From positions 276,342 to 340,341 of the IMG/VR virus record IMGVR_UViG_3300020172_001601: a stretch of DNA of 64,000 nucleotides; one strand, written 5' to 3'. Numbering within the stretch: the first letter of the stretch is position 1; the number at the start of each line of letters is the position of its first letter. The notes below the pieces were generated by a model. That model ran no database searches. It worked only from the letters and a program-made list of their open reading frames with translations, and was not told where the DNA came from. The position numbers and the translations under genes are program-made. This document shows positions 2,400 to 16,809 of this stretch, in pieces.

Positions 2400-2455
2400 G
2401 TCCAGTGTACCCTAGTGGGTGTAACAGCCCACTGGACTTTGCGAGGAAGTGAACC

Positions 2456-2782: not shown

Positions 2783-2844
2783 GTCCAGTGTACCCTAGTG
2801 GGTGTGCTGGTGAGTGTTTCAAAACCCTGTTTCGGAGAGATCGA

Positions 2845-3111
2845 ATGAGCAAGTCAAGTGCAGTTGTGGTTGTTGGTCGTGGCCGTCCTGAGCAGTACAG
2901 CGCCGGATTCATCCGTGCCTTCAAGGTGATCGTGCGGAAGCACGGTTTGCTGGCGGGTCGGGAGTTCATCAACGCCAACGGCGTGACGGTCGGCGGGAAG
3001 CATCGGGACGTGAGCATCAGCTTGCCGACCCTGAGCAAGTACGTCAAACGTGATGAAGTCGGTGGCAAGGCCGTGCCTCTCTTCCGTGGTCGTCCTACGA
3101 AGGCAGCGTAA
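2845..3111 (+). CDS. small basic protein with two AT-hook-like RGRP motifs
   Basis: GRGRP near the N-terminus and RGRPTK at the C-terminus; GGAG RBS. Confidence 0.7.
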   Translation: MSKSSAVVVVGRGRPEQYSAGFIRAFKVIVRKHGLLAGREFINANGVTVGGKHRDVSISLPTLSKYVKRDEVGGKAVPLFRGRPTKAA

Positions 3112-3266
3112 CCTTCGGGTATGCGGGGCAGGGAATGGTCCCTGCCCTATAGGGTGCTTGGCCTAGCCGAGCAATAGCAATACCCAAATGAGAATCACTG
3201 GGCGGCGTTTAGGTCTAATGTACCCTAGAGGGTGTTGAACACAACATCCTTGAATGCGAGGAAATC

Positions 3267-4091: not shown

Positions 4092-4097
4092 AAAACA

Positions 4098-4140
4098 GGA
4101 ACCCGCCATGAACTGAATCATGTGCGGGTTCTCTTGATTT
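4098..4140 (+). terminator. hairpin / putative terminator
   Basis: GAACCCGC...GCGGGTTC followed by TCTTGATTT. Confidence 0.5.
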
Positions 4141-4165
4141 ACAACTTGTGAAAGGCTGGTGGACA

Positions 4166-4465
4166 ATGAACGCTGTTGGATTGAAGAACTTTACTGAACA
4201 GGTGATAAACTCGCCTGAACCCGTGCTGGTTGACTTCTGGGCAAGTTACTGCGCTCCATGCCGGGCGTTAAAGCCGATCCTGAATGAAGTGTCAGCGACG
4301 GGGGCCAAGGTTGTGACGGTGGACATAACCGAGGAACCTGAACTGACTGCCCACTACGGCATCACTGCAATTCCTACGTTGGTCGTCTTCAAGGGCGGGC
4401 AACCGGGCCAGCGGGTTGTCGGGGTGAAGAAGAAGGACGAACTTCTGCAACTCATCAGTGCCTAA
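4166..4465 (+). CDS. trxA: thioredoxin
   Basis: VLVDFWASYCAPC active site, cis-Pro motif AIPTL, 99 aa. Confidence 0.9.
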   Translation: MNAVGLKNFTEQVINSPEPVLVDFWASYCAPCRALKPILNEVSATGAKVVTVDITEEPELTAHYGITAIPTLVVFKGGQPGQRVVGVKKKDELLQLISA

Positions 4466-4547
4466 ACCGTGTGCCGCCTTCGGGCGGCAACACCTTGCGA
4501 AGTCTAGTGTACCCTACGGGGTGTTCCAAGAAAGAAGAGGAGCTACT

Positions 4548-5153
4548 GTGAATGAGCTTGCGATTGCACGCCCCGGAAGTCTTGATCCCCGAACCCGTGT
4601 TCGTCACGGCAGAGAACGTGAACGGCAGATCGCCGTTGCGTTGAAGGATCAAGTGGGCCTCCCCATTACTGATGCCACTGAGTTCGAGGACAAAGAACGC
4701 AAGGTTGACCGATGGATCGCCTATCCTTCGGGCCGAGTTGCCCTTCAGATCAAATACCGAGAAGTCGGGGAAGACCTTCTGTTCGAGGTCTACGACAAGT
4801 TCTTCGGTTGGGATGATCCGAAGAACAAGCTGGGCCGGGATATGTTCGGCGATGCCAAGGAGTACGCCGTGCTGCTGGCTGACCGTCATACCGTCGTGAT
4901 GGTTCCGACACAGCTTGCCAAGGATACCGTCGCCAAGATGACGGAGAAGGCACGCAAAGAAGGTTTCACGCATGGAGCGGTGAGTTCAACTCTCCGCTAC
5001 TATGTTCACGGCCTGAAGCTGGAATTGAAGGTCCAGCGTGATCCCGGCGACGGACGCCAGAAGATGGTGGCATACATCCCCGCCAGCTACTTCGTGGCCG
5101 AGGCTCAAGCCAAGGTTTACCAAGTGGCACTGCCGAAGAAGTGGCAATCGTAG
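4548..5153 (+). CDS. putative PD-(D/E)XK-family nuclease
   Basis: G.E.E helix, KVD...LQIK motif; GTG start after GAGGAG; the stop is the repeat TAG. Confidence 0.55.
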   Translation: MNELAIARPGSLDPRTRVRHGRERERQIAVALKDQVGLPITDATEFEDKERKVDRWIAYPSGRVALQIKYREVGEDLLFEVYDKFFGWDDPKNKLGRDMFGDAKEYAVLLADRHTVVMVPTQLAKDTVAKMTEKARKEGFTHGAVSSTLRYYVHGLKLELKVQRDPGDGRQKMVAYIPASYFVAEAQAKVYQVALPKKWQS

Positions 5154-5206
5154 CTCCAGTGTACCCTATGGGGTGTGAAGACAATATTGCACCCCATAGG
5201 GAGATG

Positions 5207-5431
5207 ATGATGAGCATTGAACGACAACTTGTGAAGGGAGTAACGACGACTGATGTTGCCGAAGTCGTCAAGGTCAATGAGTGCATTCGCTACATTGAAT
5301 CTTGCGGCTGGTTGTTGAAGCAACGTGCCAGGGGCTATTACTACTTTCGCAACGAAAACGCCAATGAAGGTCAGCGAGACATGACTTTTTCCTTGGCAGA
5401 ACTTCGGGAGGCATACCACAATGGATGGTAA
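5207..5431 (+). CDS. hypothetical protein
   Basis: GGGAG RBS after the repeat at 5151. Confidence 0.65.
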   Translation: MMSIERQLVKGVTTTDVAEVVKVNECIRYIESCGWLLKQRARGYYYFRNENANEGQRDMTFSLAELREAYHNGW

Positions 5432-5627
5432 AGTCAAAATAAGTCACAACTATTGGTGGGAAAACGCAGTGTATTACAGGCGTTCCATCTGCGGCGGCAA
5501 TATTCAGGTCTGGAACGGTCGAATATGGACTGATGCTGCCGAGTCCTGACTTATACTGACTATTGCATACCCTTCTCCATAGGGAGTATGGGGAAGAAAG
5601 TCAGGTCTATTGTACCCTAGCCGGTGT

Positions 5628-5930
5628 AATCGCAAATTACAACACCCAGCACGGGTGGAACGCCGAGAGCCACAGGAGTAAGCACAGAAAGCATCCTCGC
5701 TGCGAAAACAATCGAGGATCGACCCGGAATAAGCCGGTCAGACAGAGTGTGAAGGCAAGAGGGTAAGCCCCTCCCACAATATATCACTCTGAATCAGTGT
5801 GGCCACACTGAGTCTGATCGAACGAAGAAGGGCAGTGCCGAAACGACTGGACGGGCGAAAGTCAGTCACTTGCTGTTGCACAGTGCATCGAAGACCGAAG
5901 GGGACGCCCTTCGGTTTTTCTTTTTTCATT
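5628..5930 (+). ncRNA. candidate structured non-coding RNA filling one repeat unit
   Basis: No RBS-led ORF; nested stems (ATCCTCG/CGAGGAT, CAGAGTG/CACTCTG, TCAGAC/GTCTGA, 18-bp palindrome 5794-5811); ends in a terminator. Confidence 0.5.
5895..5927 (+). terminator. intrinsic terminator
   Basis: ACCGAAGGG-ACG-CCCTTCGGT plus T tract. Confidence 0.85.
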
Positions 5931-5984
5931 TTGTTTAGGTCTATTGTACCCTAGCTGGCACAACCCCTAACGAAAGGCAATGCG

Positions 5985-6173
5985 ATGAACGAACAAGAAT
6001 GGCTGGAAGCATTCAATGCCGAGTTCCTGCGTAAAACCGGCATCACATGGGCAGACGGTGGGCTGGAAGATCAGGACGCCATCAATCGCTACTTCCCGGA
6101 AGACGTGAAAGACGCTGTTCTCCAGCACATGGAGAAATACGACTTGGACGACGTGACCCAACTGTGGGCATAG
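5985..6173 (+). CDS. small acidic hypothetical protein
   Basis: The stop is the repeat TAG. Confidence 0.75.
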   Translation: MNEQEWLEAFNAEFLRKTGITWADGGLEDQDAINRYFPEDVKDAVLQHMEKYDLDDVTQLWA

Positions 6174-6192
6174 GTCCAGTGTACCCTATTGG

Positions 6193-6324
6193 GTGTAATC
6201 GACCCGGCAACGCCCGAAAGATTCTAGGCAAGTACGGCGTAACCGTGACATTCCGATCATCCTGTTCACCGGCCTGCGGGTCAAAGGGGATAGAGAGTCG
6301 GGTCGATTACATTCTTTTTCTTTT
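6193..6324 (+). ncRNA. candidate structured RNA or leader closed by a 16-bp stem
   Basis: 6193-6208 pairs with 6297-6312 (2 G-U), followed by a T tract. Confidence 0.45.
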
Positions 6325-6337
6325 AGGAGAACCTGCG

Positions 6338-6502
6338 GTGAAGAAAAAATACCTTATTGCTCTGCCTTCTTTCCCTAATTCCAAGGGATTCAATCATCGA
6401 ACCATTCTTGTCAGTGCAACCGACAAGAACGATGCCGTTAGCCTTGCCCGGCATTTGCGTCCGGGTGAAAACATTGGCGACATCAAGGAAGTGAACTACT
6501 AG
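6338..6502 (+). CDS. small hypothetical protein
   Basis: AGGAG RBS, GTG start; the stop is the repeat TAG. Confidence 0.65.
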   Translation: MKKKYLIALPSFPNSKGFNHRTILVSATDKNDAVSLARHLRPGENIGDIKEVNY

Positions 6503-6558
6503 GTCCAGTGTACCCTAGTGGGTGTAACGATCACTCAACCCCTGCGAAAGAAACGACA

Positions 6559-6990
6559 ATGGACAACCTCACGAAACTTGCGATTTCCAAGGCTCTGGAA
6601 AAGGACACGAAGAACTTCAAGGCCACGCCGGGAGTTCACGACATCGACACCACGATCACCCTGCGAGTCAAAGGCACGGTGAAGAAGGGTGCGGATTCGG
6701 ATTACACGCCGACCGTGGACATTCCGCTCCTGCCGACCTTGGCACTCGTCATGGAGAAGGCTGGCTTCATGCGGGAACGGGCAAAGGAATTGCTGATCGA
6801 AGCAATGACGGAAGCCCTCGAACTCAGCACCAAGGGCGAAGAGTTCGTTGCCGACCGTGTGAAGAACATCGACGAAGCGATGGCGCACGTCCGGGAAGTC
6901 ACCGGGGCCTTGCCGAAGAAGACCAAGAGCGGGGCAACGAACGTCACCGTGACGGTCGAAGAAGTCGCTCCGGTCGAAGTCGGTGCCTAA
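6559..6990 (+). CDS. hypothetical protein
   Basis: 143 aa, strong codon bias, followed by a terminator. Confidence 0.85.
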   Translation: MDNLTKLAISKALEKDTKNFKATPGVHDIDTTITLRVKGTVKKGADSDYTPTVDIPLLPTLALVMEKAGFMRERAKELLIEAMTEALELSTKGEEFVADRVKNIDEAMAHVREVTGALPKKTKSGATNVTVTVEEVAPVEVGA

Positions 6991-6998
6991 CACTGACC

Positions 6999-7034
6999 GC
7001 ACGGCAACACTGACAATGTTGCCGTGCTTTTTGT
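6999..7034 (+). terminator. intrinsic terminator
   Basis: GCACGGCAACA...TGTTGCCGTGC plus T tract. Confidence 0.8.
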
Positions 7035-7096
7035 TGGTCGTTGTTAGGTCTAGTGTACCCTATTGGGTGTAACGAACCCCAACCTGCGAGAATAAA

Positions 7097-7429
7097 ATGA
7101 AAACTGCGACCATCCCGCAACGCAATCAACGCCTGTACAAGTGCTGGAACGGCGAACTGGAAACAGTGCTGTTCCGTGAGCAATCAATCTCCGAAGGGGC
7201 GTTTGCCGAAACGTGGCTAGTGTTCGACCCGAAGGACAGCCGCCGCATTCGTTGCAGCATTGGCAGCTACTTCACCACGCCTTACTTGGCATGGAAGGCC
7301 GAACTCAAGAGCTACCAAGACGGCCTGAAGGCCCAACGGGTGGCACTGAAGAAGGCACGGGAAGAGATCGTCACCACGAAGGCCACCATTGCCCGGCTCA
7401 AGGACATGGTTGCCCGCTCAAGCACATAA
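7097..7429 (+). CDS. hypothetical protein with C-terminal coiled coil
   Basis: ORF directly after the repeat at 7045. Confidence 0.75.
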   Translation: MKTATIPQRNQRLYKCWNGELETVLFREQSISEGAFAETWLVFDPKDSRRIRCSIGSYFTTPYLAWKAELKSYQDGLKAQRVALKKAREEIVTTKATIARLKDMVARSST

Positions 7430-7439
7430 GGAAAGAACA

Positions 7440-7673
7440 ATGGCACGGCCTCAAGCATACGACCCGCAAGAGGGTTACAAGTATCAAATCCTGACCCGCA
7501 ATCCAGCGTATGGCAGAGCATGGGAGCATTGCGACTATGCGAAGGACAAGGACGAGAAAAACCACTTGATCGGCGAATATCGCTTGGCCTATGGTGCCGG
7601 GTGGGAATTCAAGGTCATCACGTTGCCCGTCAAGTATTGGCCGAAGAGGTCCAGTGTACCCTTGATGGTGTAA
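7440..7673 (+). CDS. hypothetical protein
   Basis: AAGGA RBS; C-terminal RSSVPLMV is encoded by the repeat at 7646. Confidence 0.7.
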   Translation: MARPQAYDPQEGYKYQILTRNPAYGRAWEHCDYAKDKDEKNHLIGEYRLAYGAGWEFKVITLPVKYWPKRSSVPLMV

Positions 7674-7697
7674 CCAACACCCTGCGAGGACAAGACA

Positions 7698-7928
7698 ATG
7701 ATTAGCCGTGTGCAAGTATTTGAAACCAAGGGCAAGCAGTTCCCGACCTTGAAGAAGGCAATTGACTTCCGGGAGGGGCTGATTGAAGAGTTCATTCGGA
7801 AGCTGCCAGGGTTCGATCAAATGCGACACAAGGACCGCATTGCCTTCATTCAATCCATCATCGACAACCGTGAGGTTCTGGTGGACTTGTTTGACTACAA
7901 CGAAATTCTGGACGAAGACGAAGAATAA
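7698..7928 (+). CDS. hypothetical protein
   Basis: GAGGA RBS. Confidence 0.75.
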   Translation: MISRVQVFETKGKQFPTLKKAIDFREGLIEEFIRKLPGFDQMRHKDRIAFIQSIIDNREVLVDLFDYNEILDEDEE

Positions 7929-7937
7929 AGAGGATCA

Positions 7938-8100
7938 TTCAGGTCTGTGAGCAGCGGGGTAACTGGCAGGGAGGCATCCTGTCAGCCTGAATCGAGCGAT
8001 GGTAAGGGCCAGCGAGGGGGCTGGACATTCGACTGTATTAGGTTCCAGCCCTGATGCGACCGAATGCCCCTCGCTGGCACCTGCCTGCATTCAAACCAAG
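7938..8100 (+). ncRNA. candidate pseudoknotted RNA
   Basis: 12-bp stem 8008-8019/8067-8078 enclosing crossed pairings GCTGGA/TCCAGC and CATTCG/CGAATG. Confidence 0.4.
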
Positions 8101-8165
8101 GGTACAAATGACCTTACGTCTATTGTACCCTAGTGGGTGTAACAAACAACAAGAAAAGGAACACA

Positions 8166-8327
8166 ATGAACCCTGCCCTGCAAGCTGCTTTGATTACACT
8201 CGTTCAAGTCATTGTGAAGCTGGAGCCGCATCAATTGGCTGCGGCCCTTGACGAAATCGACCTGAGCGATGAAGGGTTCGAGGAAGAACTCAATATTGTG
8301 AAGCAAGCCATCAAGTGGCAGGATTAG
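8166..8327 (+). CDS. small hypothetical protein
   Basis: AAGGA RBS; the stop is the repeat TAG. Confidence 0.7.
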   Translation: MNPALQAALITLVQVIVKLEPHQLAAALDEIDLSDEGFEEELNIVKQAIKWQD

Positions 8328-8380
8328 GTCCAGTGTACCCTAGTGGGTGTAACGAATAACAATCATCAAGGAAACCGATC

Positions 8381-8584
8381 ATGGCTCGCAAGACCAAAGA
8401 AGAAAAACGAATCGAAGCCGCTGTCGATGCCGCCTTCAGCAAGGTGGGCAACCGTCGCCAGTTCAACATCTTCGACCTGAGCAAGATTCAAGCCGCTGGT
8501 GTGGCTGCTGGCAAGGCCGGGGAGGACATTGAAGCCGCCGTGAGCAAAGCCTGCGATCAATACGAGATCAAAGAAGCAGCGTAG
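8381..8584 (+). CDS. small hypothetical protein
   Basis: AAGGA RBS; the stop is the repeat TAG. Confidence 0.8.
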   Translation: MARKTKEEKRIEAAVDAAFSKVGNRRQFNIFDLSKIQAAGVAAGKAGEDIEAAVSKACDQYEIKEAA

Positions 8585-8634
8585 GGCCAGTGTACCCTAG
8601 TGGGTGTAACGAACAAAACTAATGCGAGACACTC

Positions 8635-9072
8635 ATGAACACCTGCAAAACCTGCAAATCTTGGAATGATGGCATTTGTGAATTGGCTGATACGGTCACA
8701 GGGCCTAAATTGTTTGACATTGTTGTTAGGGTTGCCGACGATCACGGACTTGAAACATCATTGAGAACAGGTCCAGACTTCGGCTGCGTTCATCATTCAA
8801 GCCCTGCCGTGCGACTTGGCACGTTGAACGTAGAGACTGATTGGGATTTCAGTCTTGAATTGAATGGCACTGTTTACAGCGACAGCGAGTTTTCGATTGA
8901 TATTGATTCGATGGATCAATTGGAATCAATCCAAGTTATGGGGCCATTCGGTTCACCGTCTGGCGGCAAACAATGGGAAATCCTTGCAGCTTTGGAAGCA
9001 ATCAAGGCAAATCCTAGTGAGTTCTTTTCTAATCAGGGCGGCAACCGTGGGGCAATGTGGCATCCGAAATAG
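8635..9072 (+). CDS. hypothetical protein with Cys-rich N-terminus
   Basis: CKTC...C...FGCVH; the stop is the repeat TAG. Confidence 0.75.
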   Translation: MNTCKTCKSWNDGICELADTVTGPKLFDIVVRVADDHGLETSLRTGPDFGCVHHSSPAVRLGTLNVETDWDFSLELNGTVYSDSEFSIDIDSMDQLESIQVMGPFGSPSGGKQWEILAALEAIKANPSEFFSNQGGNRGAMWHPK

Positions 9073-9107
9073 CTCCAGTGTACCCTGGTGGGTAAGGAGA
9101 TCAAACC

Positions 9108-9401
9108 ATGCTGACAACTGCGGAACGAATTGAACAAGCGACAGCTTACGGCGTAGGCACCAAAGCCTATGTTGACACCTTCGGGGGAATGGTCCCCTGT
9201 GTGGTCACGGAAATTCACAAGCCGAACGCCAATGGCATTGTCATCGGCCACGACGAATTGACCGTGCGAATTGAAGAAACCCGTGGGGGATATACGAAAG
9301 GCGAGATCGTCACACGGTCAGCCGCATACACTCCCCCACGAAAGCATCGTATCCTGCGGGGATACAGCTACCGAATCAACACGGCGTACAAGTACGTCTA
9401 G
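9108..9401 (+). CDS. hypothetical protein
   Basis: AAGGAG RBS; stop lies inside the repeat at 9393. Confidence 0.8.
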   Translation: MLTTAERIEQATAYGVGTKAYVDTFGGMVPCVVTEIHKPNANGIVIGHDELTVRIEETRGGYTKGEIVTRSAAYTPPRKHRILRGYSYRINTAYKYV

Positions 9402-9418
9402 TGTACCCTACATGGCAA

Positions 9419-9749
9419 CACGGTATGGCTGCTCAAGTGGTGTTGCAGCATTGCTTGAGCATAACACGAGGAGAGAAAAACCAATGGGCAACTAATTCCC
9501 CGATGATGACAAATAGGCGATGCAACAAGCCTTGATCGGACGCAATCGTGCTGCAATACGATTGAACAAGACAAGAAACGACTGCAAGACCTTGCTGTTT
9601 AGGGGCGACCATACGGAATGTCGCAAAACTTAGCCGTGCCGAATTGGTCAGTGCGCAAAGCAGAGAAAACCAGCACCAGCTACCACTGGTGAAAGGCATC
9701 GGTAGAGCAGGTTGGAGTCCTGCAAATCTGGTTTTCTCTGCTTTGGGCA
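9419..9749 (+). ncRNA. candidate structured non-coding RNA filling one repeat unit
   Basis: No credible ORF; hairpin 9430-9461; perfect 18-bp stem 9656-9673/9728-9745 enclosing two hairpins. Confidence 0.5.
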
Positions 9750-9805
9750 TAGGTCTAGTGTACCCTAGTGTGTGTAACGAACACTCAACCCTGCGAGACA
9801 AGAAC

Positions 9806-10171
9806 ATGGCCGACTTGAAAGAAAAGATTGCTGAGTTTGTGAAGGCCGCTGACGAAGTGTCTGCCGCTTATTGGGAGCGACAGAAATTCACCTTCGCCAA
9901 GCCGACGCAACACCGTGCCGACTTCATCAGCGACAAATGGGTGCGTGTCGTGTCTCTGGACGTGCCGCATGAAGGCCCGCCAGTCGTGTCGTCGGTCTAT
10001 GCCTTCATCGCCCTGCAAGACGGCCACACGAAGACGCTGGGAGCAATCAAGGCGGGCGACATTCACAAGCCTGCCGGGTTCAAGGCCCCTGCCAAGCACG
10101 CACGGGGCAACGTCTTCGAGGATGACTTCCGCAAGGCTATCCAGCCGAACGGCATCGTTTACTTGAAATAA
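9806..10171 (+). CDS. hypothetical phage protein (GDIHKPAGFKAPAKHARGN motif)
   Basis: ORF after the repeat at 9750; the motif resembles one I recall from other phage hypothetical proteins. Confidence 0.85.
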   Translation: MADLKEKIAEFVKAADEVSAAYWERQKFTFAKPTQHRADFISDKWVRVVSLDVPHEGPPVVSSVYAFIALQDGHTKTLGAIKAGDIHKPAGFKAPAKHARGNVFEDDFRKAIQPNGIVYLK

Positions 10172-10303
10172 TACAACGCAGACTAGGCCAGTCTGCGGGG
10201 GAGCCAACGAGCGGCTATGCCAAGCAGGAAACTCCCCTGAAATCACAGGTCCAGTGTACCCTGGTGGGTGTGAATAACACCCACCACTTCTAAGGAATGC
10301 GAG

Positions 10304-10531
10304 TTGACTTACCAAGAATTGAAAGCAAAGGTCAGTGCAGCACTTGGCGACGTTGGATTTTCCATCGAAGCGACGGACGACGGCCAGTTGGTCATTTATA
10401 CCGACTTGAAAGAAGTCGAAGATCAGGACGAACTGGAGAACTACGAGCCGACGAATGAACCCTTGGAATCATTGGACGACTTTCTGAGAGAAGAGTTGGG
10501 CGACAAAGACGCTTCCCTGTTTCTCAAGTAG
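10304..10531 (+). CDS. acidic hypothetical protein
   Basis: AAGGA RBS, TTG start; the stop is the repeat TAG. Confidence 0.7.
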   Translation: MTYQELKAKVSAALGDVGFSIEATDDGQLVIYTDLKEVEDQDELENYEPTNEPLESLDDFLREELGDKDASLFLK

Positions 10532-10585
10532 GTCCAGTGTACCCTAGTGGGTGTAACGAACAACCTCAACACGGAGAACTCTGCG

Positions 10586-10816
10586 ATGGCTATTACGCTG
10601 ACCCCTTCCTATGGTCGTGACTACAAGAACGGCAAAGAAGTCCAAGAAGCCTGGGACGCTGGCAAGGACTTCACGATCAACTCCATCGGCCACCCGGACG
10701 ATGGGCGGCAGATCAACAAGCAGGACGCCGAACGTGAGGGCGGCACCTTCAACATCCGGTACAAAAAACTGACCCAGATCAAGGTCATCAAGGTCAAGAA
10801 GGTCGCTGCGGCTTAG
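10586..10816 (+). CDS. hypothetical protein (LTPSYGRDYK motif)
   Basis: GGAG RBS; the stop is the repeat TAG. Confidence 0.85.
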   Translation: MAITLTPSYGRDYKNGKEVQEAWDAGKDFTINSIGHPDDGRQINKQDAEREGGTFNIRYKKLTQIKVIKVKKVAAA

Positions 10817-10842
10817 GTCCAGTGTACCTTACACAGTGTAAC

Positions 10843-11053
10843 GCCTCCCAAACATCGGCCTTGGGCAAGCCAATCAATCAGAATAAAGGAACCCCTTCCC
10901 ATGAATGTCTGAAGTCCGCTAACTCCCCGGCGTAGTCATCCACGTTAGAGCGGGGCGGGACTGCAAAGCGATGGCCGCACGTCAGCAATGGGCAGCATTG
11001 TGCTGGCTGACGTGTGAATGAAGTGCCTCCCAAACATTGGCCTTGGGCAAGCC
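10843..11053 (+). repeat. pair of 29-bp direct repeats in a non-coding unit
   Basis: GCCTCCCAAACAT(C/T)GGCCTTGGGCAAGCC at 10843-10871 and 11025-11053. Confidence 0.9.
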
Positions 11054-11067
11054 GAAAGCAAATGCGT

Positions 11068-11100
11068 AGGGCAGGACCAACCTGCCCTTTTTTTGTTTTT
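11068..11100 (+). terminator. intrinsic terminator
   Basis: AGGGCAGG-ACCAA-CCTGCCCT plus T tract. Confidence 0.85.
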
Positions 11101-11149
11101 GTTTGTGTAGGTCTATTGTACCCTAGAGGGTGTAACAAGCGAACAACAT

Positions 11150-11287
11150 GGCGGCGTAGCTCAACTGGCTAGAGCAACCATCATTATCGTAGCGATTGAT
11201 CGGGGGTCCACGGTCAATGCGGCCAACGTGTGTACAGCGTTGGTTTGAGAGGATGGGAAGACGGGGGTTCGATGCCCTCCGCTGTCT
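11150..11287 (+). ncRNA. tRNA-like RNA with the anticodon loop replaced by a ~70-nt insert
   Basis: Acceptor GGCGGCG/CGCTGTC, TA, D arm GCTC-AACTGGCTA-GAGC, stem CCATC/GATGG, 5-nt variable loop, T arm GGGGG-TTCGATG-CCCTC; no encoded CCA. Confidence 0.8.
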
Positions 11288-11402
11288 GCTTACACTGTAG
11301 GGCATTTGCCCGAACAACGAGGCGTCAGAACACGCCTACAACCCCGAAAGGGGAGAGAGTGTAAGGTAGCCGTAGTGTACCCTAGTGGGCAGGAGAACAA
11401 CA

Positions 11403-11561
11403 ATGCGAAAAACTGAAGGGGCAACCAAAGCCCACGCCTCTGTCGGGTATCACAAACACCTTCGACCATTCGGCAAGCGACTGGCGAACAAAGCCACTCG
11501 CAAGAATGGCAAGCGTAGCACCAGTGTACCCTATGGGGCAGGAGACAAACATGGAAATTGA
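11403..11561 (+). CDS. small basic protein
   Basis: AGGAG RBS; MRKTEGATKAHASVGYHKHLRPFGKRLANK...; reads through the repeat at 11516; below the ORF-track cut-off. Confidence 0.55.
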   Translation: MRKTEGATKAHASVGYHKHLRPFGKRLANKATRKNGKRSTSVPYGAGDKHGN

Positions 11562-11922
11562 AGACGTGCGAAATACCCGATCCATGAGAATGGACCCGGA
11601 AAGCCCTGCGGAATACGACGAGATGGACGCCATCACCGCTGGCCCCAATGGTATGAAATTGATGCCAGTGTTCAGCGGTGAGATGTTTCAACAGTCCGTT
11701 GCCTATCCCGTCATCGTGGAAGCATGGGACAAGAAGAACAGCGGACGCCACAAACGCCGATGGGAAGCGACATTCACCCAAGCCGAACGGAACAAGATCA
11801 GCCGGTATTATGGCCGGTTTTACCGCTGGTATCTGGTCAGCGGCACGCCCAAACGTGTGTCACTGCAATTGAACACCTTGACCCTCCTGCAAAGGGCAGT
11901 GAACTTCTTCGCTGAATGTTAG
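11551..11922 (+). CDS. hypothetical protein
   Basis: AGGAG RBS; the stop is the repeat TAG. Confidence 0.8.
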   Translation: MEIEDVRNTRSMRMDPESPAEYDEMDAITAGPNGMKLMPVFSGEMFQQSVAYPVIVEAWDKKNSGRHKRRWEATFTQAERNKISRYYGRFYRWYLVSGTPKRVSLQLNTLTLLQRAVNFFAEC

Positions 11923-11943
11923 GGCTAGTGTACCCTAGAGGGC

Positions 11944-12237
11944 ATGATGAAAGACGCATACGGAAACGATCAAGTATATCTGGTCCAGCCCACAACTCTG
12001 GACTATGAGATCAGCTATGGTGGCGATGGTGTCAAAACATGCCAAGAGGGACGCTATCGACACTATTTCACTGCCAGTGCTGGCGGTTTGTCGGGTAGCA
12101 TTAGAATTCAATTGAACCGAGTCAGCGCCGAACGGTTTGCTGCCTATAACGGCCTGCGGTTGATAACCGACGTTGAACGTGAAGAAATTCAAGAAAGGTG
12201 GAGCGTCAGAGTGCCGGATTGGTCCAGTGTACCCTAG
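11944..12237 (+). CDS. hypothetical protein
   Basis: Starts 6 nt after the 18-bp repeat core; ends WSSVP* inside the next repeat. Confidence 0.65.
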   Translation: MMKDAYGNDQVYLVQPTTLDYEISYGGDGVKTCQEGRYRHYFTASAGGLSGSIRIQLNRVSAERFAAYNGLRLITDVEREEIQERWSVRVPDWSSVP

Positions 12238-12274
12238 ACGGTGTAACGATCACTCAACCCTGCGGAGAATGACA

Positions 12275-12526
12275 ATGGTTCAATTGAAAGTCGTGGCTGT
12301 GTCGAGCAACCACAATAGTTTCGGCCTGCGAAACATGATCCTCATCGGGGACAATGGCGAAGGCTGGCAAGCTGCGGCCAATGACCTGAACGTGAAGCCG
12401 AAGGATACCATCCTGCGGATACCCGAAGGGCAGGACATTCCCACGTTCCTGACGCTGCAATCTTTCGAGATTCCTTCACAACTGGCCGACCCGCCTGCCG
12501 AACTATTGAAAGAAGTTTGGGGCTAG
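12275..12526 (+). CDS. hypothetical protein
   Basis: GGAG RBS; the stop is the repeat TAG. Confidence 0.8.
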   Translation: MVQLKVVAVSSNHNSFGLRNMILIGDNGEGWQAAANDLNVKPKDTILRIPEGQDIPTFLTLQSFEIPSQLADPPAELLKEVWG

Positions 12527-12584
12527 GTCCAGTGTACCCTAGAGGGTGTAAGGAACACTTCAGTCCTCTGCGAAAGGCAATGCG

Positions 12585-12920
12585 ATGTTGAGCCACAAAA
12601 TTGCGATTTACATTCCTTCCACTGTCAACGGCAATCAGCCCGCCCCGGTTGATATGATCGAACGGTGGGTGCGGGCCAGCAAGATCAAGCTGGCCAACCT
12701 GTTCGGTGGGTTTACGACCTACAACGGGCAAGGGGGATGGTACTCGCCCGAACACGGTTTGATCGAAGAGAACGTGATTATCGTTCAAGCGTTCACCGAT
12801 CAAGAGGGGCTGACCAAACTGGACAAAGTGAACGAACTGGCGAAGGAAATCGCCAGCGACATGGGCCAGGAAATGGTGTCGGTCGAAGTCGATGGAACAC
12901 TCAACTTCGTGACAGCGTAA
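12585..12920 (+). CDS. DUF3574-like / PII-fold-like hypothetical protein
   Basis: FGGFTTYNGQGGW...E...GQEMV pattern. Confidence 0.55.
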   Translation: MLSHKIAIYIPSTVNGNQPAPVDMIERWVRASKIKLANLFGGFTTYNGQGGWYSPEHGLIEENVIIVQAFTDQEGLTKLDKVNELAKEIASDMGQEMVSVEVDGTLNFVTA

Positions 12921-12925
12921 GGCAG

Positions 12926-12955
12926 GGACGGGCAGTAATGCCCGTCTTTTTTTCT
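12926..12955 (+). terminator. intrinsic terminator
   Basis: GACGGGCA-GTAA-TGCCCGTC plus T tract. Confidence 0.85.
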
Positions 12956-12988
12956 GAGTTTGTGTAGGTCTATTGTACCCTAGAGAAC

Positions 12989-13255
12989 ATGAGAGTCAGC
13001 AACACATTATTGATTTCCCTGTTTTATGAACCGGGAACGTCACATATTGCCGGAATTGAAAACCGAGCAATACAAGCGATGGAATTGGGGATGATTTCAG
13101 AACTCCCCAAGATCACTGTGGCGAAAAGTGAGAAGACACCATTCTGGCACTTGAAGCTGGAAGTCAAGGATGAAGATCGGCCATTCTGGTTCGGTTTTTA
13201 CTTAGGGAAAGACTTCTGCATCAACAATCGACCAATCACTGTCGGCTGTGATTAG
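12989..13255 (+). CDS. hypothetical protein
   Basis: Starts 6 nt after the repeat core; the stop is the repeat TAG. Confidence 0.7.
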   Translation: MRVSNTLLISLFYEPGTSHIAGIENRAIQAMELGMISELPKITVAKSEKTPFWHLKLEVKDEDRPFWFGFYLGKDFCINNRPITVGCD

Positions 13256-13309
13256 GTCCAGTGTACCCTAGAGGGTGTAAGGAACACTTAACCCCCTGCG
13301 AGATACGCC

Positions 13310-13495
13310 ATGCCGAAGAAAATGGATCATGCCGCCTACCAACGTGGTCTGCGGTCGAAGTCGGTTGCTCAACTCCAATTTATTGCGAAGGATGCCAACG
13401 AAGCCGCCACGGTTAACCCGCAAGGCGAAAACGCTGGCTACTACGCCGACGAAGTGCATTATGCACTCGCCGAACTCAAACGTCGTCAAGGATGA
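13310..13495 (+). CDS. small hypothetical protein
   Basis: 61 aa after the repeat at 13253. Confidence 0.75.
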   Translation: MPKKMDHAAYQRGLRSKSVAQLQFIAKDANEAATVNPQGENAGYYADEVHYALAELKRRQG

Positions 13496-13671
13496 AAAAC
13501 ATGAAACTGGCAAGCATAGCGGTCGCATTCCTCCTGTTGGCGGGATGCGCCGCTCCTCCGAGACATTGGGAAGCTCCCCGTGAGCATTACCACAAGGAAT
13601 TAAGCGTCGAAGTCCGGGAAAGCGGCGATGGCCGTCCCCAAGTCGTTGCTACGTTCAAAATCACCAACTAG
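13492..13671 (+). CDS. small lipoprotein
   Basis: MKNMKLASIAVAFLLLAG-C lipobox; ATGA overlap; the stop is the repeat TAG; 59 aa, absent from the ORF track. Confidence 0.75.
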   Translation: MKNMKLASIAVAFLLLAGCAAPPRHWEAPREHYHKELSVEVRESGDGRPQVVATFKITN

Positions 13672-13725
13672 GTCCAGTGTACCCTATATGGTGTGAAGGA
13701 CACCAACAAAAAGGGAAACCAAGCC

Positions 13726-13911
13726 ATGCACACAACGACCGCACGAAAGGACAACAAGAAAACAACAATCGTTCTGCCGCCGCTTCCACCGTGGCAAGTG
13801 GCGAAGGGACACCAACAACACCGTGGCGGGGCAGGCACTCACGCCGACCGCCGCACGAACCGTCAACGGACACGAGCCGCCCAACAACGGGCAGCAGTGT
13901 CAGATGACTGA
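13726..13911 (+). CDS. small basic protein
   Basis: Arg-rich AGTHADRRTNRQRTR. Confidence 0.65.
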   Translation: MHTTTARKDNKKTTIVLPPLPPWQVAKGHQQHRGGAGTHADRRTNRQRTRAAQQRAAVSDD

Positions 13912-14093
13912 AAGGCACCATCATGTGCAAACTAAACTCTAAGGCAAGGAGGCTGCAAAAGGCAAGACGTTGGGCTGAAAAGATGCTGATCGACCTGAAG
14001 ACGTGGCCCGGTGGACTTGAAGACTTCGCCGAAGCACTTAGGTCCAGTGTACCCTATATGGTGTGAAGAACACTCAACCCTGCGAGATCAATC

Positions 14094-14321
14094 ATGAAGA
14101 CCGAACCGAAGACGTTCCGCTTGGGCAGCAACGACATGGTTTCTGCCCCCGGCATCCTCAAGTGGGCCATGAATGGCTACAAATTCAAACGTGACCGCAA
14201 GAAGATGGTCAACGTGATGAAAGCGTGGGAGGGCCTGACCGATGCCCAATGGGGCAAGGTGCTGGCGGGTGAAATCCCCCACACCATCGAAGGCGATGTC
14301 GTGGTAATCACCATCGAATGA
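14094..14321 (+). CDS. hypothetical protein
   Basis: ORF between a repeat and a terminator. Confidence 0.8.
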   Translation: MKTEPKTFRLGSNDMVSAPGILKWAMNGYKFKRDRKKMVNVMKAWEGLTDAQWGKVLAGEIPHTIEGDVVVITIE

Positions 14322-14325
14322 CAAC

Positions 14326-14356
14326 AAAGGGCAGCAAGTCGCTGCCCTTTTCTTTT
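14326..14356 (+). terminator. intrinsic terminator (same hairpin as at 16169)
   Basis: AAAGGGCAGC-AAGTC-GCTGCCCTTT plus T tract. Confidence 0.85.
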
Positions 14357-14414
14357 ATGTTTTTGTGTAGGTCTATTGTACCCTAGTGGGTGTCACACAA
14401 AGGAGACAATTGCG

Positions 14415-14762
14415 ATGATTACCAAAGTATCTGCTGACACGTTTCACAATGATGTTTACCACCACGATGGCCCTGTCGTCGTGACCTTCGGCTATACGGG
14501 CTGCGGCCCATGCCGTTCCTTGCAACCCAGCCTTGAGAAGCTGGCCGAAACTGGCGTCAAGGTCGTCAAGGTCGATATTGTCGATGACCCTGACATTGCC
14601 ACGCACTTCGGCATCAGCAGCGTGCCGACAACCCTGTTCTTCGCCCGTGGCGAACCACGATTGTCGTTCAATGGCGTTGCCAACGTCAAGAAGCTGCAAG
14701 CACTGCTGGCTGAAGCCGTGGCCGATGGCGAGAAGTCGCCCGCCGACCACGCCCATGCCTAG
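14415..14762 (+). CDS. thioredoxin-family protein
   Basis: VVVTFGYTGCGPC, SSVPT cis-Pro motif; the stop is the repeat TAG. Confidence 0.88.
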   Translation: MITKVSADTFHNDVYHHDGPVVVTFGYTGCGPCRSLQPSLEKLAETGVKVVKVDIVDDPDIATHFGISSVPTTLFFARGEPRLSFNGVANVKKLQALLAEAVADGEKSPADHAHA

Positions 14763-14816
14763 CCCTAGTGTACCCTATAGGGTGTGATGGAACGAAACCT
14801 TCAACGGAGAACTGCG

Positions 14817-15056
14817 ATGGCTAACGGTTGGCATGAAGACTTTGAAGACGAAACCTTCCCGCCCGAACTGCACGAGCAGGAAGACTGGAGCGAACTCGAA
14901 GAAGACTTCGACGACGAAGAGTTCGACGATGACGAATTCGAGGACGATGACGGCGAACTGGCCCGTGACCTGATCCTTGAACGTCAGGAACTCGAAGACT
15001 TCGAGGGCCTTGATCCCTTCGAGGATCGCTACGACTACGAAGGCGACGGCTTCTAA
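14817..15056 (+). CDS. extremely acidic small protein
   Basis: 38 of 79 residues are D/E, no Lys; GGAG RBS. Confidence 0.8.
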   Translation: MANGWHEDFEDETFPPELHEQEDWSELEEDFDDEEFDDDEFEDDDGELARDLILERQELEDFEGLDPFEDRYDYEGDGF

Positions 15057-15065
15057 GGGCAACGA

Positions 15066-15100
15066 AGGACAGGGAAAGCCTCCCTGTCCTTTTTCTTTCT
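15066..15100 (+). terminator. intrinsic terminator
   Basis: AGGACAGGGA-AAGCC-TCCCTGTCCT plus T tract. Confidence 0.85.
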
Positions 15101-15172
15101 GAGTTTGTGTAGGTCTATTGTACCCTAGTGGGTGTGTCGAAGAGAACGAAACCTGTCCAACGGAGAACTGCA

Positions 15173-15358
15173 ATGGTGACTGCGACCATCGAAGGCAACG
15201 AACTCGTGATTCGCCTTCCCCTCAACACGCCCCGGCCCAGCGCCACGGGCAAGACGCTCGTGGTTGCCACGAGCAGCGGCAACAAGGCCACCGAAGCCGA
15301 AGTCAACGGGCAAAAGGTAGTCGTCGGCGTCAACGCCTACATCTACCCGCCCAAATAG
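15173..15358 (+). CDS. small hypothetical protein (SATGKTLVVAT motif)
   Basis: GGAG RBS, strong codon bias. Confidence 0.8.
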   Translation: MVTATIEGNELVIRLPLNTPRPSATGKTLVVATSSGNKATEAEVNGQKVVVGVNAYIYPPK

Positions 15359-15438
15359 TCAACAAAAGGCAACACTAGGGTACGTCCAGTGTACCCTAGT
15401 GTGTGTTGGGATCAATCACCTTCACTCAAGGATCGACC

Positions 15439-15684
15439 ATGCGAGTATTGGCTAAGACGTTCGGCTGGCTTGTCGTCAGTGGGCTTATCATCTTCATCAG
15501 CAACCTGAGCGCCGGTGTCGATTGGAAAGTCGCCCTGATCGGTGCGGCTGTTGCGAAGATCGGCACGACCATTGCCTACTTCTTCTACGAAATCGGCTTC
15601 GAGAAGGCGTGGAAACGTCAGCCAAAGGCAACGACGGTCACGGCAACAACGGCATCGGCAACGCCATGCCCTTGCCCGGCTTAG
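15439..15684 (+). CDS. DUF2061-like membrane protein
   Basis: R..AKT..W, two hydrophobic segments, YFFYE...W; the stop is the repeat TAG. Confidence 0.6.
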   Translation: MRVLAKTFGWLVVSGLIIFISNLSAGVDWKVALIGAAVAKIGTTIAYFFYEIGFEKAWKRQPKATTVTATTASATPCPCPA

Positions 15685-15752
15685 GGCTAGTGTACCCTAG
15701 AGGGTGTCCAACACGGACGAACGACAACCCCCTGCGAATGAGGAACTGAGTT

Positions 15753-16160
15753 ATGGCCACTACTGAAGTCAAGCTGGTATCGGAAATCATCGAAGCTGTC
15801 CCCGGCGTCAAGCGTGCGTTCCACGTCTTCACGCCAGCCCTTCAGCATCGCCTTGAGAACAACGCCAGCAACCTGCCGGTGATGGCCCTGCGGTCTTCAA
15901 TCCACAACTACGGCAAGATGAAGCTGTACGCTCGCATCGAATGCCTTGGGCCGTCCAGCCTTGACCCGCTGTTCGGCAACCCACTGCCCGGCACGGGTGG
16001 CCGTGGCGTGGCAATCATGTTCACCGAATTCCCCCTTCGGGTATGGTATCCCGAAGGGCAAAAGCCCCCGGTCGTTGACACGCCGGACGGACGCAACCCG
16101 AAGGACATACTTGAGGAAGTCAAGCTCAAGTATGAACTCGCCTTCCACGACGATTTCTAA
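15753..16160 (+). CDS. hypothetical protein
   Basis: GAGGA RBS, followed by a terminator. Confidence 0.85.
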   Translation: MATTEVKLVSEIIEAVPGVKRAFHVFTPALQHRLENNASNLPVMALRSSIHNYGKMKLYARIECLGPSSLDPLFGNPLPGTGGRGVAIMFTEFPLRVWYPEGQKPPVVDTPDGRNPKDILEEVKLKYELAFHDDF

Positions 16161-16168
16161 TCGTCAGG

Positions 16169-16200
16169 AAAGGGCAGCAAGTCGCTGCCCTTTCTTTTTG
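16169..16200 (+). terminator. intrinsic terminator
   Basis: AAAGGGCAGC-AAGTC-GCTGCCCTTT plus T tract. Confidence 0.85.
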
Positions 16201-16514
16201 TTTATGTTTGTGTAGGTCTATTGTACCCTAGAGGGCAAGGAGATCGGCACATGACCTTTCGAGAGTGGTATCGGATGACCGAACGTGAGATTCGGTGGAA
16301 TCGCAGTTTCCTGTATCGTGTCTTCAACAAGATCGGACTCGCATGATTCGCAAAGCTCTGGCCTTCGTGGTCAACGTCTTCAACTTCCTCGTTCCTGCGA
16401 ACCAAGGGCCGCAACCGACGCCGCCCAACTACTTCGGCCCCTGCCCGTAGTAGGTCAAGTGTACCCTAGTGAGTGCGGGCAATGTCGCCCGCCTCACTCT
16501 TGGGGTTTTACAAA

Positions 16515-16655
16515 ATGAAAAAGAAACATCGCAACGACAAGAACCACGGGCGCAACGGCTGGGTCGGTGGCAACCCACGCTATGCGGGCAAGGGATTCAA
16601 GAAGGGCGACCGAGCCAAGGCAAAGGCCGAAGCCCGTAGGTCCAGTGTACCCTAG
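16515..16655 (+). CDS. small basic protein
   Basis: Lys/Arg-rich; ends RSSVP* inside a repeat. Confidence 0.55.
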   Translation: MKKKHRNDKNHGRNGWVGGNPRYAGKGFKKGDRAKAKAEARRSSVP

Positions 16656-16729
16656 TGAGCTAGTGTACCCTATGGTGCATAGTGCATAGTGCATAGCATA
16701 GACTATGCACTTCTTTATTCAAAGAAGCA

Positions 16730-16809
16730 TAGGGTACAATAGCCCTAACAATGTTGCATAATTAAAAACAAAACAATTATTCGAGAAAACATTGGGTACA
16801 ATAGACCTA
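16730..16809 (-). repeat. two inverted copies of the array element
   Basis: Reverse complement of 16730-16747 is TAGGGCTATTGTACCCTA; of 16792-16809 is TAGGTCTATTGTACCCAA. Confidence 0.92.

What the first reader, a model, noticed from the sequence alone, without database searches (positions are those of the whole stretch)
5602..16240. Two element classes track upstream context: TAT variant after terminators, CAG variant after stop codons
Seen: GTCTATTGTACCC copies (5602, 5936, 8115, 11108, 12965, 14368, 15110, 16213) follow a hairpin or structured non-coding stretch, usually a T-tailed terminator and often TTTGTG. GTCCAGTGTACCC copies mostly abut a coding end. The terminator+spacer+element block is near-duplicated (14326-14385 vs 16169-16230 share the hairpin; 12951-12982 vs 15096-15127). 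Neighbouring copies share extended flanks (2058/2397, 12524/13253, 13669/14039). Inference: there are operon-head and internal versions of the signal, spread as mobile regulatory blocks and homogenised locally.
Basis: partly seen in the sequence, partly recalled or inferred. Interest (0 to 1): 0.6.

Follow-up and report, generated by a model that had tools for sequence, protein, structure and literature searches.

The report
Two-grade promoter-like element in huge phage
An uncultivated huge phage carries about 58 same-strand copies of a 26-base promoter-like signal in front of its small genes, in an A/T-only form after terminators and a G/C-interrupted form that overlaps the previous gene's stop codon, and related phages keep this split.

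Summary
The window is the last 64 kb of a 340-kb phage contig. The element is a contiguous 26-nt block, TAG-GTCYAKTGTACCC-TAGWGGGTGT. About 58 copies sit on one strand of a 28-kb array of small genes and non-coding cassettes, and nowhere else in the contig.

GTCTATTG copies follow a hairpin plus T-run in 10 of 13 cases and never abut an ORF end. GTCCAGTG copies follow none in 33 cases, and in 26 of them the element's own TAG is the upstream stop codon.

The split recurs in related contigs. These include a 78%-identical relative in which the first three bases changed in nearly all copies (TGT-CAGTG against TGT-AATTG), and a 603-kb phage contig (TGT-CATTG against TGT-AATTG). The general rule is that head copies have an A/T-only tetranucleotide at +3..+6, and internal copies carry a G or C there.

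Cassette gains and losses between relatives break at the element. The phage's other genes use about 33 canonical sigma-70-type promoters, so this element is a separate class.

I read it as a promoter for a phage-specified transcription factor or polymerase, strong at operon heads and attenuated internally. No RNA data exist, and the protein that reads it is unidentified.

It resembles T4-type PeSL cassettes in behaviour but is not a member of that family.

The parts
1..16711 (+). Window part of a 28-kb co-directional array of small ORFs and non-coding cassettes. It begins 11.1 kb upstream of the window, at genome 265,227. Each cassette is preceded by the 26-nt element.
   Evidence: about 58 + strand copies with at most 1 mismatch between genome 265,227 and 292,981. 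Elsewhere in the 340 kb there are only two scattered 1-mismatch hits.
5602..5627 (+). Head-type element (TAG-less here: CAG-GTCTATTGTACCC-TAGCCGGTGT). It follows a 10-bp hairpin without a T-run and is followed by a ~330-nt non-coding cassette.
5936..5961 (+). Head-type element after the terminator at 5890-5919
8115..8140 (+). Head-type element. An inverted partner copy (8100-8112, - strand) lies 5 nt upstream, and the pair is a perfect 13+13 palindrome in relative L001.
11108..11133 (+). Head-type element after the terminator at 11068-11088. It drives a tRNA-like cassette.
12965..12990 (+). Head-type element after the terminator at 12924-12949
14368..14393 (+). Head-type element after the terminator at 14326-14350. 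It precedes a thioredoxin-like gene.
15110..15135 (+). Head-type element after the terminator at 15064-15092
16213..16238 (+). Head-type element after the terminator at 16166-16196. A Shine-Dalgarno sequence (AAGGAG) starts at +21 of the element.
22..16665 (+). Internal-type elements (TAG-GTCCAGTGTACCC-TAGWGGGTGT). The GTC starts at 25, 825, 1298, 2061, 2400, 2783, 6174, 6503, 7649, 8328, 10249, 10532, 12222, 12527, 13256, 13672, 14042, 15384 and 16640. One-mismatch copies are at 5154, 8585, 9073 and 10817. GTCTAGTG-type copies are at 4502, 7048, 9396, 9753, 11923 and 15685. Degenerate copies are at 3213, 11519, 14763, 16454 and 16658.
   Evidence: In most, the upstream ORF's stop codon is the TAG at -3..-1.
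6999..7027 (+). Terminator followed by a GTCTAGTG (intermediate) element at 7048. This is one of two terminator-preceded GTCTAGTG (intermediate) copies in this genome.
16688..16711 (+). Hairpin plus T-run that closes the array
16732..16806 (-). Two head-type copies on the opposite strand (16794-16806 and 16732-16744) that face into the array's end. They are conserved in relative L001.
4138..4167 (+). The one sigma-70-like promoter inside the array (TTTACA-18-GACAAT). It sits in front of a thioredoxin gene that lacks the element.

Best explanation
The 26-nt block is a class-specific promoter of a huge myovirus-like phage. It is read on DNA by a phage-specified factor, either an alternative sigma or an unidentified polymerase, and not by the host's housekeeping sigma. 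Transcription probably starts inside the block at about +14 to +20, counted from the G of GTC. The block comes in two grades. Head copies sit after a terminator, after a non-coding RNA cassette or at the array's edges, where no transcription arrives from upstream. They carry an uninterrupted A/T tetranucleotide at +3..+6 (TATT here; AATT or ATTT in relatives) and usually a T-rich flank. I infer that this makes them the stronger, self-sufficient initiators. Internal copies carry a G or C in that tetranucleotide (CAGT or TAGT here; CATT in a relative). I infer that they are attenuated promoters that top up read-through transcripts. Their TAG doubles as the upstream gene's stop codon. The repeated block also serves as the crossover point for cassette gain and loss. 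Shown: the anatomy, the association, its conservation across lineages, and the breakpoints.
For: (1) The block is contiguous from -3 to +22, and nothing is conserved upstream of it. This fits a single reader better than a -35/-10 pair.

(2) Every strong + strand terminator inside the array is followed within about 20 nt by the element, and no other conserved or sigma-70-like sequence lies before the next gene (8 sigma-70-like sites against 9.1 expected). Something there must restart transcription.

(3) Three post-terminator copies have a Shine-Dalgarno sequence starting at +21/+22, and start codons cluster at a median of +52. The start site must therefore lie within the block.

(4) Elsewhere the same genome has 33 strict matches to TTKACA-N13-15-nTGGTAnAAT, against 0 expected. 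The host-type promoter is thus standard, and the array element is a different class. Three hits pass Pfam's Sigma70_r2 cut-off and a fourth falls below it; all four lie outside the array.

(5) Class against context. A/T-only against terminator: G000 10/4 against 3/43, p = 3e-6. Relative R2 6/2 against 1/31, p = 5e-5. The 603-kb relative 4/2 against 0/17, p = 0.0017.

(6) In the 78%-identical relative, bases 0..+2 changed from GTC to TGT in nearly all copies of both classes, yet the class split was kept. This argues for a co-evolving sequence-specific reader and for selection on the split.

(7) TAT never swaps with another form between orthologous sites, whereas CAG and TAG swap freely.
Against: There are no expression data. 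No RNA run holds this DNA, so the start site, promoter activity and relative strength are all untested.

No polymerase gene was found in the 340 kb. PF00940 and PF00562 gave nothing, and 29 of the 32 ORFs over 450 aa gave no polymerase in PHROGs or Pfam. The contig is estimated to be only 69% complete.

The four sigma-like proteins have a region-4-like C-terminus. That would normally imply a bipartite promoter, and this block does not look bipartite.

Orthologous head copies are old, so part of the association is inherited rather than independently evolved.

The inward-facing copies on the - strand at the array's end, and the inverted partner copies, are not explained by a simple promoter model.
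Confidence: 0.6

Rival explanations
1. Division of labour. Only head copies are promoters. Internal copies act in the RNA, as cleavage or binding sites that cut the polycistronic transcript into monocistronic mRNAs sharing one 5' leader.
For: Internal copies are certainly transcribed if the heads fire, because no terminator lies between them. All cassettes then share the same leader start and a tight distance to the start codon. The G or C that marks internal copies could be an RNA-level requirement.
Against: The small hairpin in the block (+8..+21) shows no compensatory change. Its 5' arm is invariant, and 9-26% of the 3' arm bases vary and simply break the pair. Downstream folding is no better than in shuffled controls (mean z = 0.03). 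Rfam finds nothing. Internal letters differ between lineages (CAGT, TAGT, CATT) without a common RNA motif.
Confidence: 0.15
2. The element is a binding site for a regulator, either a repressor or roadblock in the manner of mycobacteriophage stoperators or an activator. It is not the promoter itself. The two forms are high- and low-affinity sites.
For: The site is asymmetric, present in many copies, always oriented with transcription, and often overlaps stop codons. Three head copies here, and all copies in the 673-kb relative, have an inverted partner that forms a palindrome suited to a dimer.
Against: Post-terminator genes would then have no promoter at all, because nothing else is conserved or sigma-70-like between terminator and gene. 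No repressor-like gene was identified. At 26 nt and roughly 40 bits (summed by hand from the per-position values), the block is long for a monomer site.
Confidence: 0.12
3. The class split is only history. The variable bases lie in the 5' half of the repeat and travel with whatever lies upstream, because crossovers fall in the invariant core. All terminator-ended cassettes would descend from one terminator-plus-TAT block.
For: In recombinants the head form stays with the upstream terminator while the downstream cassette differs (L001 11329 and 13787 against window 12968 and 16216). Terminator tails resemble each other, and one pair shares its hairpin.
Against: At least nine different hairpins precede head copies. 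Head copies without any terminator (5605, 8118, the array edges and the - strand copies) are still A/T-only. Bases 0..+2 were replaced in both classes of a relative while the split survived, and the class letters themselves changed class by class (TATT to AATT; CAGT to CATT).
Confidence: 0.1

Closest known systems
PeSL (promoter-early stem-loop) cassettes of T4-type phages (Arbiol et al. 2010, PMC2839356; Comeau et al. 2014, PMC4122927)
   Same: Repeated promoter-plus-terminator motifs flank small ORFans in a hyperplastic early region of a large myovirus. Insertions, deletions and replacements between close relatives break at the motifs. No dedicated recombinase is needed.
   Different: PeSLs are sigma-70-like (-35, -10, A/T-rich upstream) and always include a stem-loop. 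This element is a contiguous 26-nt block unlike the phage's own sigma-70-type promoters. Only about a quarter of copies follow a terminator. The block overlaps the upstream stop codon. It has two context-bound forms, which I did not find described for PeSLs in the passages I read.
Promoters of T7-type single-subunit RNA polymerases (T7, T3, SP6); from my own knowledge
   Same: About 20-26 contiguous conserved bases that run a few bases past the start. A G-rich initial transcribed sequence (GGG at +17..+19 here). An upstream part where A/T content matters. Lineage-specific changes of a few bases in all copies, as between T7 and T3.
   Different: No T7-like polymerase gene was found, and the phage is a huge myovirus-like phage. 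The copy number (58 in 28 kb) is far higher. The start site is unmapped.
Stoperators of cluster A mycobacteriophages; from my own knowledge
   Same: Short asymmetric sites in many copies. One orientation relative to transcription. Frequently at gene ends and stop codons.
   Different: Stoperators are 13-bp repressor sites in temperate phages and are not needed for initiation. Here the element is the only candidate initiator after terminators.
Integron gene-cassette arrays (attC)
   Same: One-directional array of small cassettes, each bounded by a repeated site at which cassettes are gained and lost.
   Different: No integrase lies beside the array. The element has no attC-like imperfect palindrome. 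Cassettes appear to bring or receive their own promoter rather than being promoterless.

Membership tests
PeSL (T4-type promoter-early stem-loop) | Sigma-70-like -35 and -10 boxes with an A/T-rich upstream region | tested here: not met
   There is no conservation upstream of -3. Sigma-70-like sites in the array number 8 against 9.1 expected. The genome's real sigma-70-type promoters are a different motif.
PeSL (T4-type promoter-early stem-loop) | A stem-loop terminator or attenuator as part of each motif | tested here: not met
   Present for 10 of 13 head copies and for 0 of 33 CAG copies.
PeSL (T4-type promoter-early stem-loop) | Indels between close relatives break at the motif | tested here: met
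   Block starts lie at -1..-9 and block ends at +12..+35 of the element, in many contigs. 18 of 54 collapsed breakpoints fall within the element zone in both genomes, against 12% expected, p = 4e-5.
PeSL (T4-type promoter-early stem-loop) | Excised mini-circles | not testable with these tools
   Needs inverse PCR on infected cells or phage stocks.
T7-type single-subunit polymerase promoter | Contiguous conserved block of about 20 bases ending just past the start | tested here: met
   Block -3..+22. The start is constrained to about +20 or earlier by Shine-Dalgarno positions.
T7-type single-subunit polymerase promoter | A cognate single-subunit polymerase gene in the genome | tested here: inconclusive
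   PF00940 found nothing in 340 kb, but the control genomes also gave nothing and the contig is about 69% complete. 29 of the 32 ORFs over 450 aa gave no polymerase.
N4-type virion-polymerase hairpin promoter | Conserved hairpin in the promoter and a giant virion polymerase | tested here: not met
   The mini-hairpin shows no covariation. The 3112-aa ORF has no polymerase motifs or PDB sequence match and looks like a tape measure.
Host sigma-70 promoter | -35 and -10 hexamers 16-18 nt apart | tested here: not met
   Geometry is impossible within the block given a start at or before +20, and nothing is conserved at the position where a -35 would lie.
Integron attC | Adjacent tyrosine-recombinase integrase and an imperfect palindromic attC | tested here: not met
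   Flanking ORFs have no recombinase domain, and the element is not an attC-like palindrome.
Stoperator-type repressor sites | Bound by the phage repressor; not required for initiation | not testable with these tools
   Needs binding assays. The sequence argument against is that post-terminator genes have no other promoter candidate.

The most novel reading that the evidence does not exclude
A clade of huge phages (contigs of 340 to 673 kb) runs its small-gene array on an orthogonal transcription system. The promoter is a single contiguous block centred on TTGTACCCTA. The promoter has a built-in two-level strength switch, set by whether a four-base A/T tract is intact. The same block acts as universal stop codon, restart signal and recombination joint for gene cassettes.
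Probability: 0.35. Interest if true: 0.7.

Novelty: new variant of a known kind. Interest (0 to 1): 0.55.

Why it matters
Huge phages are known almost only from metagenomes, and how they schedule transcription is largely unknown. This work gives a concrete, testable promoter class that is separate from the host-type promoters of the same genome. It also gives a simple sequence rule that separates operon heads from internal sites, and that rule holds over deep divergence. The lineage-specific switch of three bases in nearly all copies offers a handle for finding the protein that reads the element, by looking for co-varying residues. If the two forms differ in strength, they are a natural graded promoter pair. 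The finding also extends the idea that repeated regulatory motifs drive cassette shuffling beyond the T4-type phages.

Tried and rejected
Expression data. No RNA run holds the stretch.

Read laying. The one read-laying run (5,901 letters, four DNA runs) returned only Logan contigs. Every joint lies at an element, but with 20-33 letters on the short side. That is what a 26-nt repeat does to a k = 31 assembly, so I do not count it as evidence of recombination.

RNA families. Rfam at gathering and at E <= 1 gave nothing beyond terminator look-alikes. ARAGORN found no tRNA in the window or the upstream 18 kb.

5' stem-loop. A conserved stem-loop after the element is rejected. Mean z against shuffles is 0.03, and only 5 of 57 copies have a strong hairpin.

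Polymerase hunt. PF00940 and PF00562 were negative. 29 of the 32 ORFs over 450 aa, scanned in PHROGs and/or Pfam, gave DNA polymerase, ligase, helicase, RNA ligase and baseplate proteins but no RNA polymerase.

The 3112-aa ORF. No family match, no PDB sequence match and no polymerase motifs. It has an A/G/L-rich hydrophobic centre and lies just before the baseplate genes, so it is probably a tape measure.

The conserved 527-aa array gene. A good model (pLDDT 86) gave only weak Hsp90/GHKL-like matches.

ECF-type reading (TGTAAC as -35, CGAG as -10). Rejected, because the spacing to TGTAAC varies from 10 to 16 nt while the spacing to ATG is constant. TGCGAG is therefore part of the ribosome-binding region.

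Sigma-54 reading. Rejected, because the GG-N10-GC pattern is absent.

Literature. A full-text search for the motif found nothing relevant.

Inaccessible records. The 603-kb and 673-kb records could not be searched for polymerase genes.

No other genetic code was used.
Full report
WHAT THE WINDOW IS

The window is the last 64 kb of a single 340,341-bp virus record. CheckV estimates the record to be about 69% complete. Baseplate wedge, hub and P2-I-like tail proteins mark it as a myovirus-like huge phage. It also encodes a tyrosyl-tRNA synthetase and a CCA-adding enzyme. Elsewhere in the contig there are a DNA polymerase, ligase, helicase and RNA ligase. Only DNA runs from freshwater and sediment metagenomes hold it.

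CHECKING THE OBSERVATION

There are 8 + strand and 1 - strand copies of GTCTATTGTACCC and 19 + strand copies of GTCCAGTGTACCC, against none expected.

With one mismatch allowed, there are about 58 + strand copies. They lie between genome 265,227 and 292,981, which is from 11.1 kb upstream of the window to window 16,652. The rest of the 340 kb has essentially none.

Aligned on the 13-mer, the conserved unit is one contiguous block from -3 to +22: TAG-GTCYAKTGTACCC-TAGWGGGTGT. Nothing is conserved further upstream.

I scored two things for each copy. One was an upstream hairpin of at least -8 kcal/mol followed by a T-run. The other was whether an ORF stops at the element. In this genome, TAT copies follow a terminator in 10 of 13 cases and never abut an ORF end. 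CAG copies follow a terminator in 0 of 33 cases, and in 26 of 33 the upstream ORF ends at the element's own TAG (p = 7e-8). An independent pattern scan finds the same strong terminators.

DOES IT HOLD ELSEWHERE?

A pattern scan of metagenome contigs found about ten contigs 85-97% identical to this array. Counting only copies whose context is not identical to one already counted, TAT is 10/14 after terminators and CAG is 1/37. Collapsing all copies with similar upstream sequence gives TAT 14/4 against CAG+TAG 2/56. Between orthologous sites, CAG and TAG swap freely, but TAT never changes.

Two more distant relatives are more telling.

The first is IMG/VR contig UViG_3300027976_002058. It is syntenic and 78% identical over 14 kb. 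Its element begins TGT instead of GTC in nearly all copies. Internal copies read TAG-TGTCAGTGTACCC. Copies after terminators read TGTAATTGTACCC or TGTATTTGTACCC.

The second is a 603-kb contig, found through a conserved array protein. It has TGTCATTGTACCC seventeen times, none after a terminator. It has TGTAATTG or TGTATTTG six times, four of them after a terminator.

The rule that covers all three lineages is this. Head copies have only A or T at +3..+6 (TATT, AATT, ATTT). Internal copies have a G or C there (CAGT, TAGT, CATT). A/T-only against terminator gives:
- this genome: 10/4 against 3/43, p = 3e-6;
- the 78% relative: 6/2 against 1/31, p = 5e-5;
- the 603-kb contig: 4/2 against 0/17, p = 0.0017.

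A 673-kb contig has a still more diverged version. Every copy there pairs with an inverted partner about 20 nt upstream.

WHAT IT IS

The case for a promoter rests on anatomy.

- Each of the seven strong + strand terminators inside the window's array is followed within about 20 nt by the element. The element is followed by a ribosome-binding site and a gene.
- Nothing else is conserved in that gap, and sigma-70-like sites are no commoner than in shuffles.
- Three post-terminator copies have a Shine-Dalgarno sequence starting at +21/+22. Start codons sit at a median of +52. The transcript must therefore begin inside the block, at about +20 or earlier.
- That leaves no room for a -35/-10 pair, because nothing is conserved where a -35 would lie.

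The rest of the genome uses a quite different and entirely canonical promoter, TTTACA-N14-GTGGTAGAAT. It has 33 strict matches, 31 on the + strand, against none expected. One of these sits inside the array, at 4138-4167, in front of a thioredoxin gene that lacks the element. So the host's housekeeping promoter type is standard, and the array element is a second class that needs its own reader.

No single-subunit or multisubunit polymerase domain was found. There are three hits above Pfam's Sigma70_r2 cut-off and a fourth below it, far from the array. At least one of them sits behind a canonical promoter.

The wholesale GTC-to-TGT change in a relative is what a co-evolving, sequence-specific reader would produce. 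The T7-type polymerase promoters are the familiar precedent (from my own knowledge).

WHY TWO FORMS?

The distinguishing bases come after the stop codon, so coding does not constrain them.

They are not a simple hitch-hiker on one ancestral terminator block, for three reasons:
- At least nine different hairpins precede head copies.
- Head copies that follow non-coding RNA cassettes, or that sit at the array's edges, are also A/T-only.
- The neighbouring three bases were replaced in both classes of a relative while the split was kept, and each class changed its own letters (TATT to AATT; CAGT to CATT).

I therefore take the split to be selected. The simplest mechanism is a four-base A/T tract about 10-15 nt upstream of the start that raises affinity or eases opening. 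Where no polymerase arrives from upstream, the full tract is needed. Inside an operon, a weakened tract gives a modest top-up and avoids a strong promoter complex in the path of elongating polymerase. This mechanistic step is inference.

RNA-level roles are not supported. The small hairpin in the block shows no compensatory change. Downstream folding equals shuffled controls.

CASSETTES

Between this phage and its relatives, homology blocks begin 1-9 nt before an element and end 12-35 nt into or after one. Single cassettes are missing, added or replaced between neighbouring copies. Breakpoints are enriched in the element zone.

In recombinants, the head form stays with the upstream terminator while the downstream cassette differs. 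Crossovers therefore fall in the invariant core or further 3'.

The block closes two of the three reading frames: TAG at -3, TAG at +13, and often TAA at +22. TAG is the stop of 35 of 59 array genes, against 40 of 213 long ORFs elsewhere.

Many unrelated genes share the 5'UTR that follows the block (GTAACGAWCACTCAACCCTGCGAG). Adjacent copies are more alike than chance. No recombinase flanks the array.

COMPARISON WITH WHAT IS KNOWN

In behaviour this is closest to the PeSL cassettes of T4-type phages (PMC2839356, PMC4122927). Those are repeated promoter-terminator motifs around ORFans, at which indels occur. It is not a PeSL, for three reasons. It is not sigma-70-like. Most copies have no stem-loop. 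It has two context-bound forms.

In architecture it looks most like a T7-type promoter, but no such polymerase was found. It also shares orientation and stop-codon overlap with mycobacteriophage stoperators, and cassette logic with integrons. It fails their defining features where these could be tested.

VERDICT

The finding is a new variant of a known kind. What is missing is any measurement of RNA.

Noticed in passing
genome 58-254 kb and 300 kb (outside the window, except window ~24,030); inside the array at window 4138-4167: A second, canonical promoter class, TTTACA-N14-GTGGTAGAAT (extended -10). It has 33 strict matches, 31 on the + strand, against 0 expected. At least one of the sigma-like genes (232 aa, genome 62,375) has one directly upstream.
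   Followed up: partly
window 11147-11290 (+): A tRNA-like sequence. It has an acceptor and D-arm at the 5' end and a GGTTCGATGCC T-arm plus acceptor at the 3' end, interrupted by about 70 nt. ARAGORN and Rfam do not call it. It has its own head-type element and is conserved in relatives.
   Followed up: partly
window 5628-5935, 6187-6340, 7930-8100, 9410-9750, 10830-11100; genome 267,915-268,250: Cassettes with an element in front and often a terminator behind, but with no ORF. They are candidate small RNAs of 150-350 nt. No Rfam family matches.
   Followed up: partly
window 8100-8130; genome 265,308-265,349 and 268,223-268,264; window 16732-16806 (-): Inverted partner copies (GGGTACAAATGNN) lie 5 nt upstream of three head copies and form palindromes. 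The whole array is bracketed by head-type copies that face inward (genome 265,227 on + and window 16806 on -). Their role is unexplained.
   Followed up: partly
window 36073-45411 (+): A 3112-aa ORF just upstream of the baseplate hub gene. It has no family or PDB sequence match and has an A/G/L-rich hydrophobic middle (residues ~1000-1600). It is probably an exceptionally long tape measure.
   Followed up: partly
genome 268,635-270,218 (locus L058), inside the array: A 527-aa protein with more than 700 homologues in huge-phage contigs of up to 673 kb. It carries an ExxSNAxDR motif. The model is confident (pLDDT 86), and its only weak fold matches are to Hsp90-type GHKL ATPases. It always sits a few genes after a RuvB-like AAA+ gene.
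   Followed up: partly
locus L065 5170-5300 and 5330-5400, 6460-6660 (genome ~263.5-265.0 kb): Iteron-like direct repeats (CCCAGCTATCTCCACA, four to five copies) and repeated TGTGTGAAG boxes lie in the non-coding stretch between the divergent left-hand genes and the array.
   Followed up: no
window 4166-4465 and 14415-14762: Two thioredoxin-like genes lie in the array. One is behind a sigma-70-like promoter and the other behind a head-type element.
   Followed up: no
genome 70-163 kb and 275.3-275.5 kb: About 45 copies of the tRNA T-loop word GGTTCGAnTCC on the + strand suggest a large tRNA gene set. Two lie inside the array just upstream of the window, although ARAGORN called none there.
   Followed up: no
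genome 1-1,720 and window ~63,100-64,000: Both contig ends carry short tandem repeats (GGCAACCAAGG about 16 times; CTTCGGGCCGGTAAAC-type about 12 times), the latter inside an ORF with a weak WSN-domain hit.
   Followed up: no
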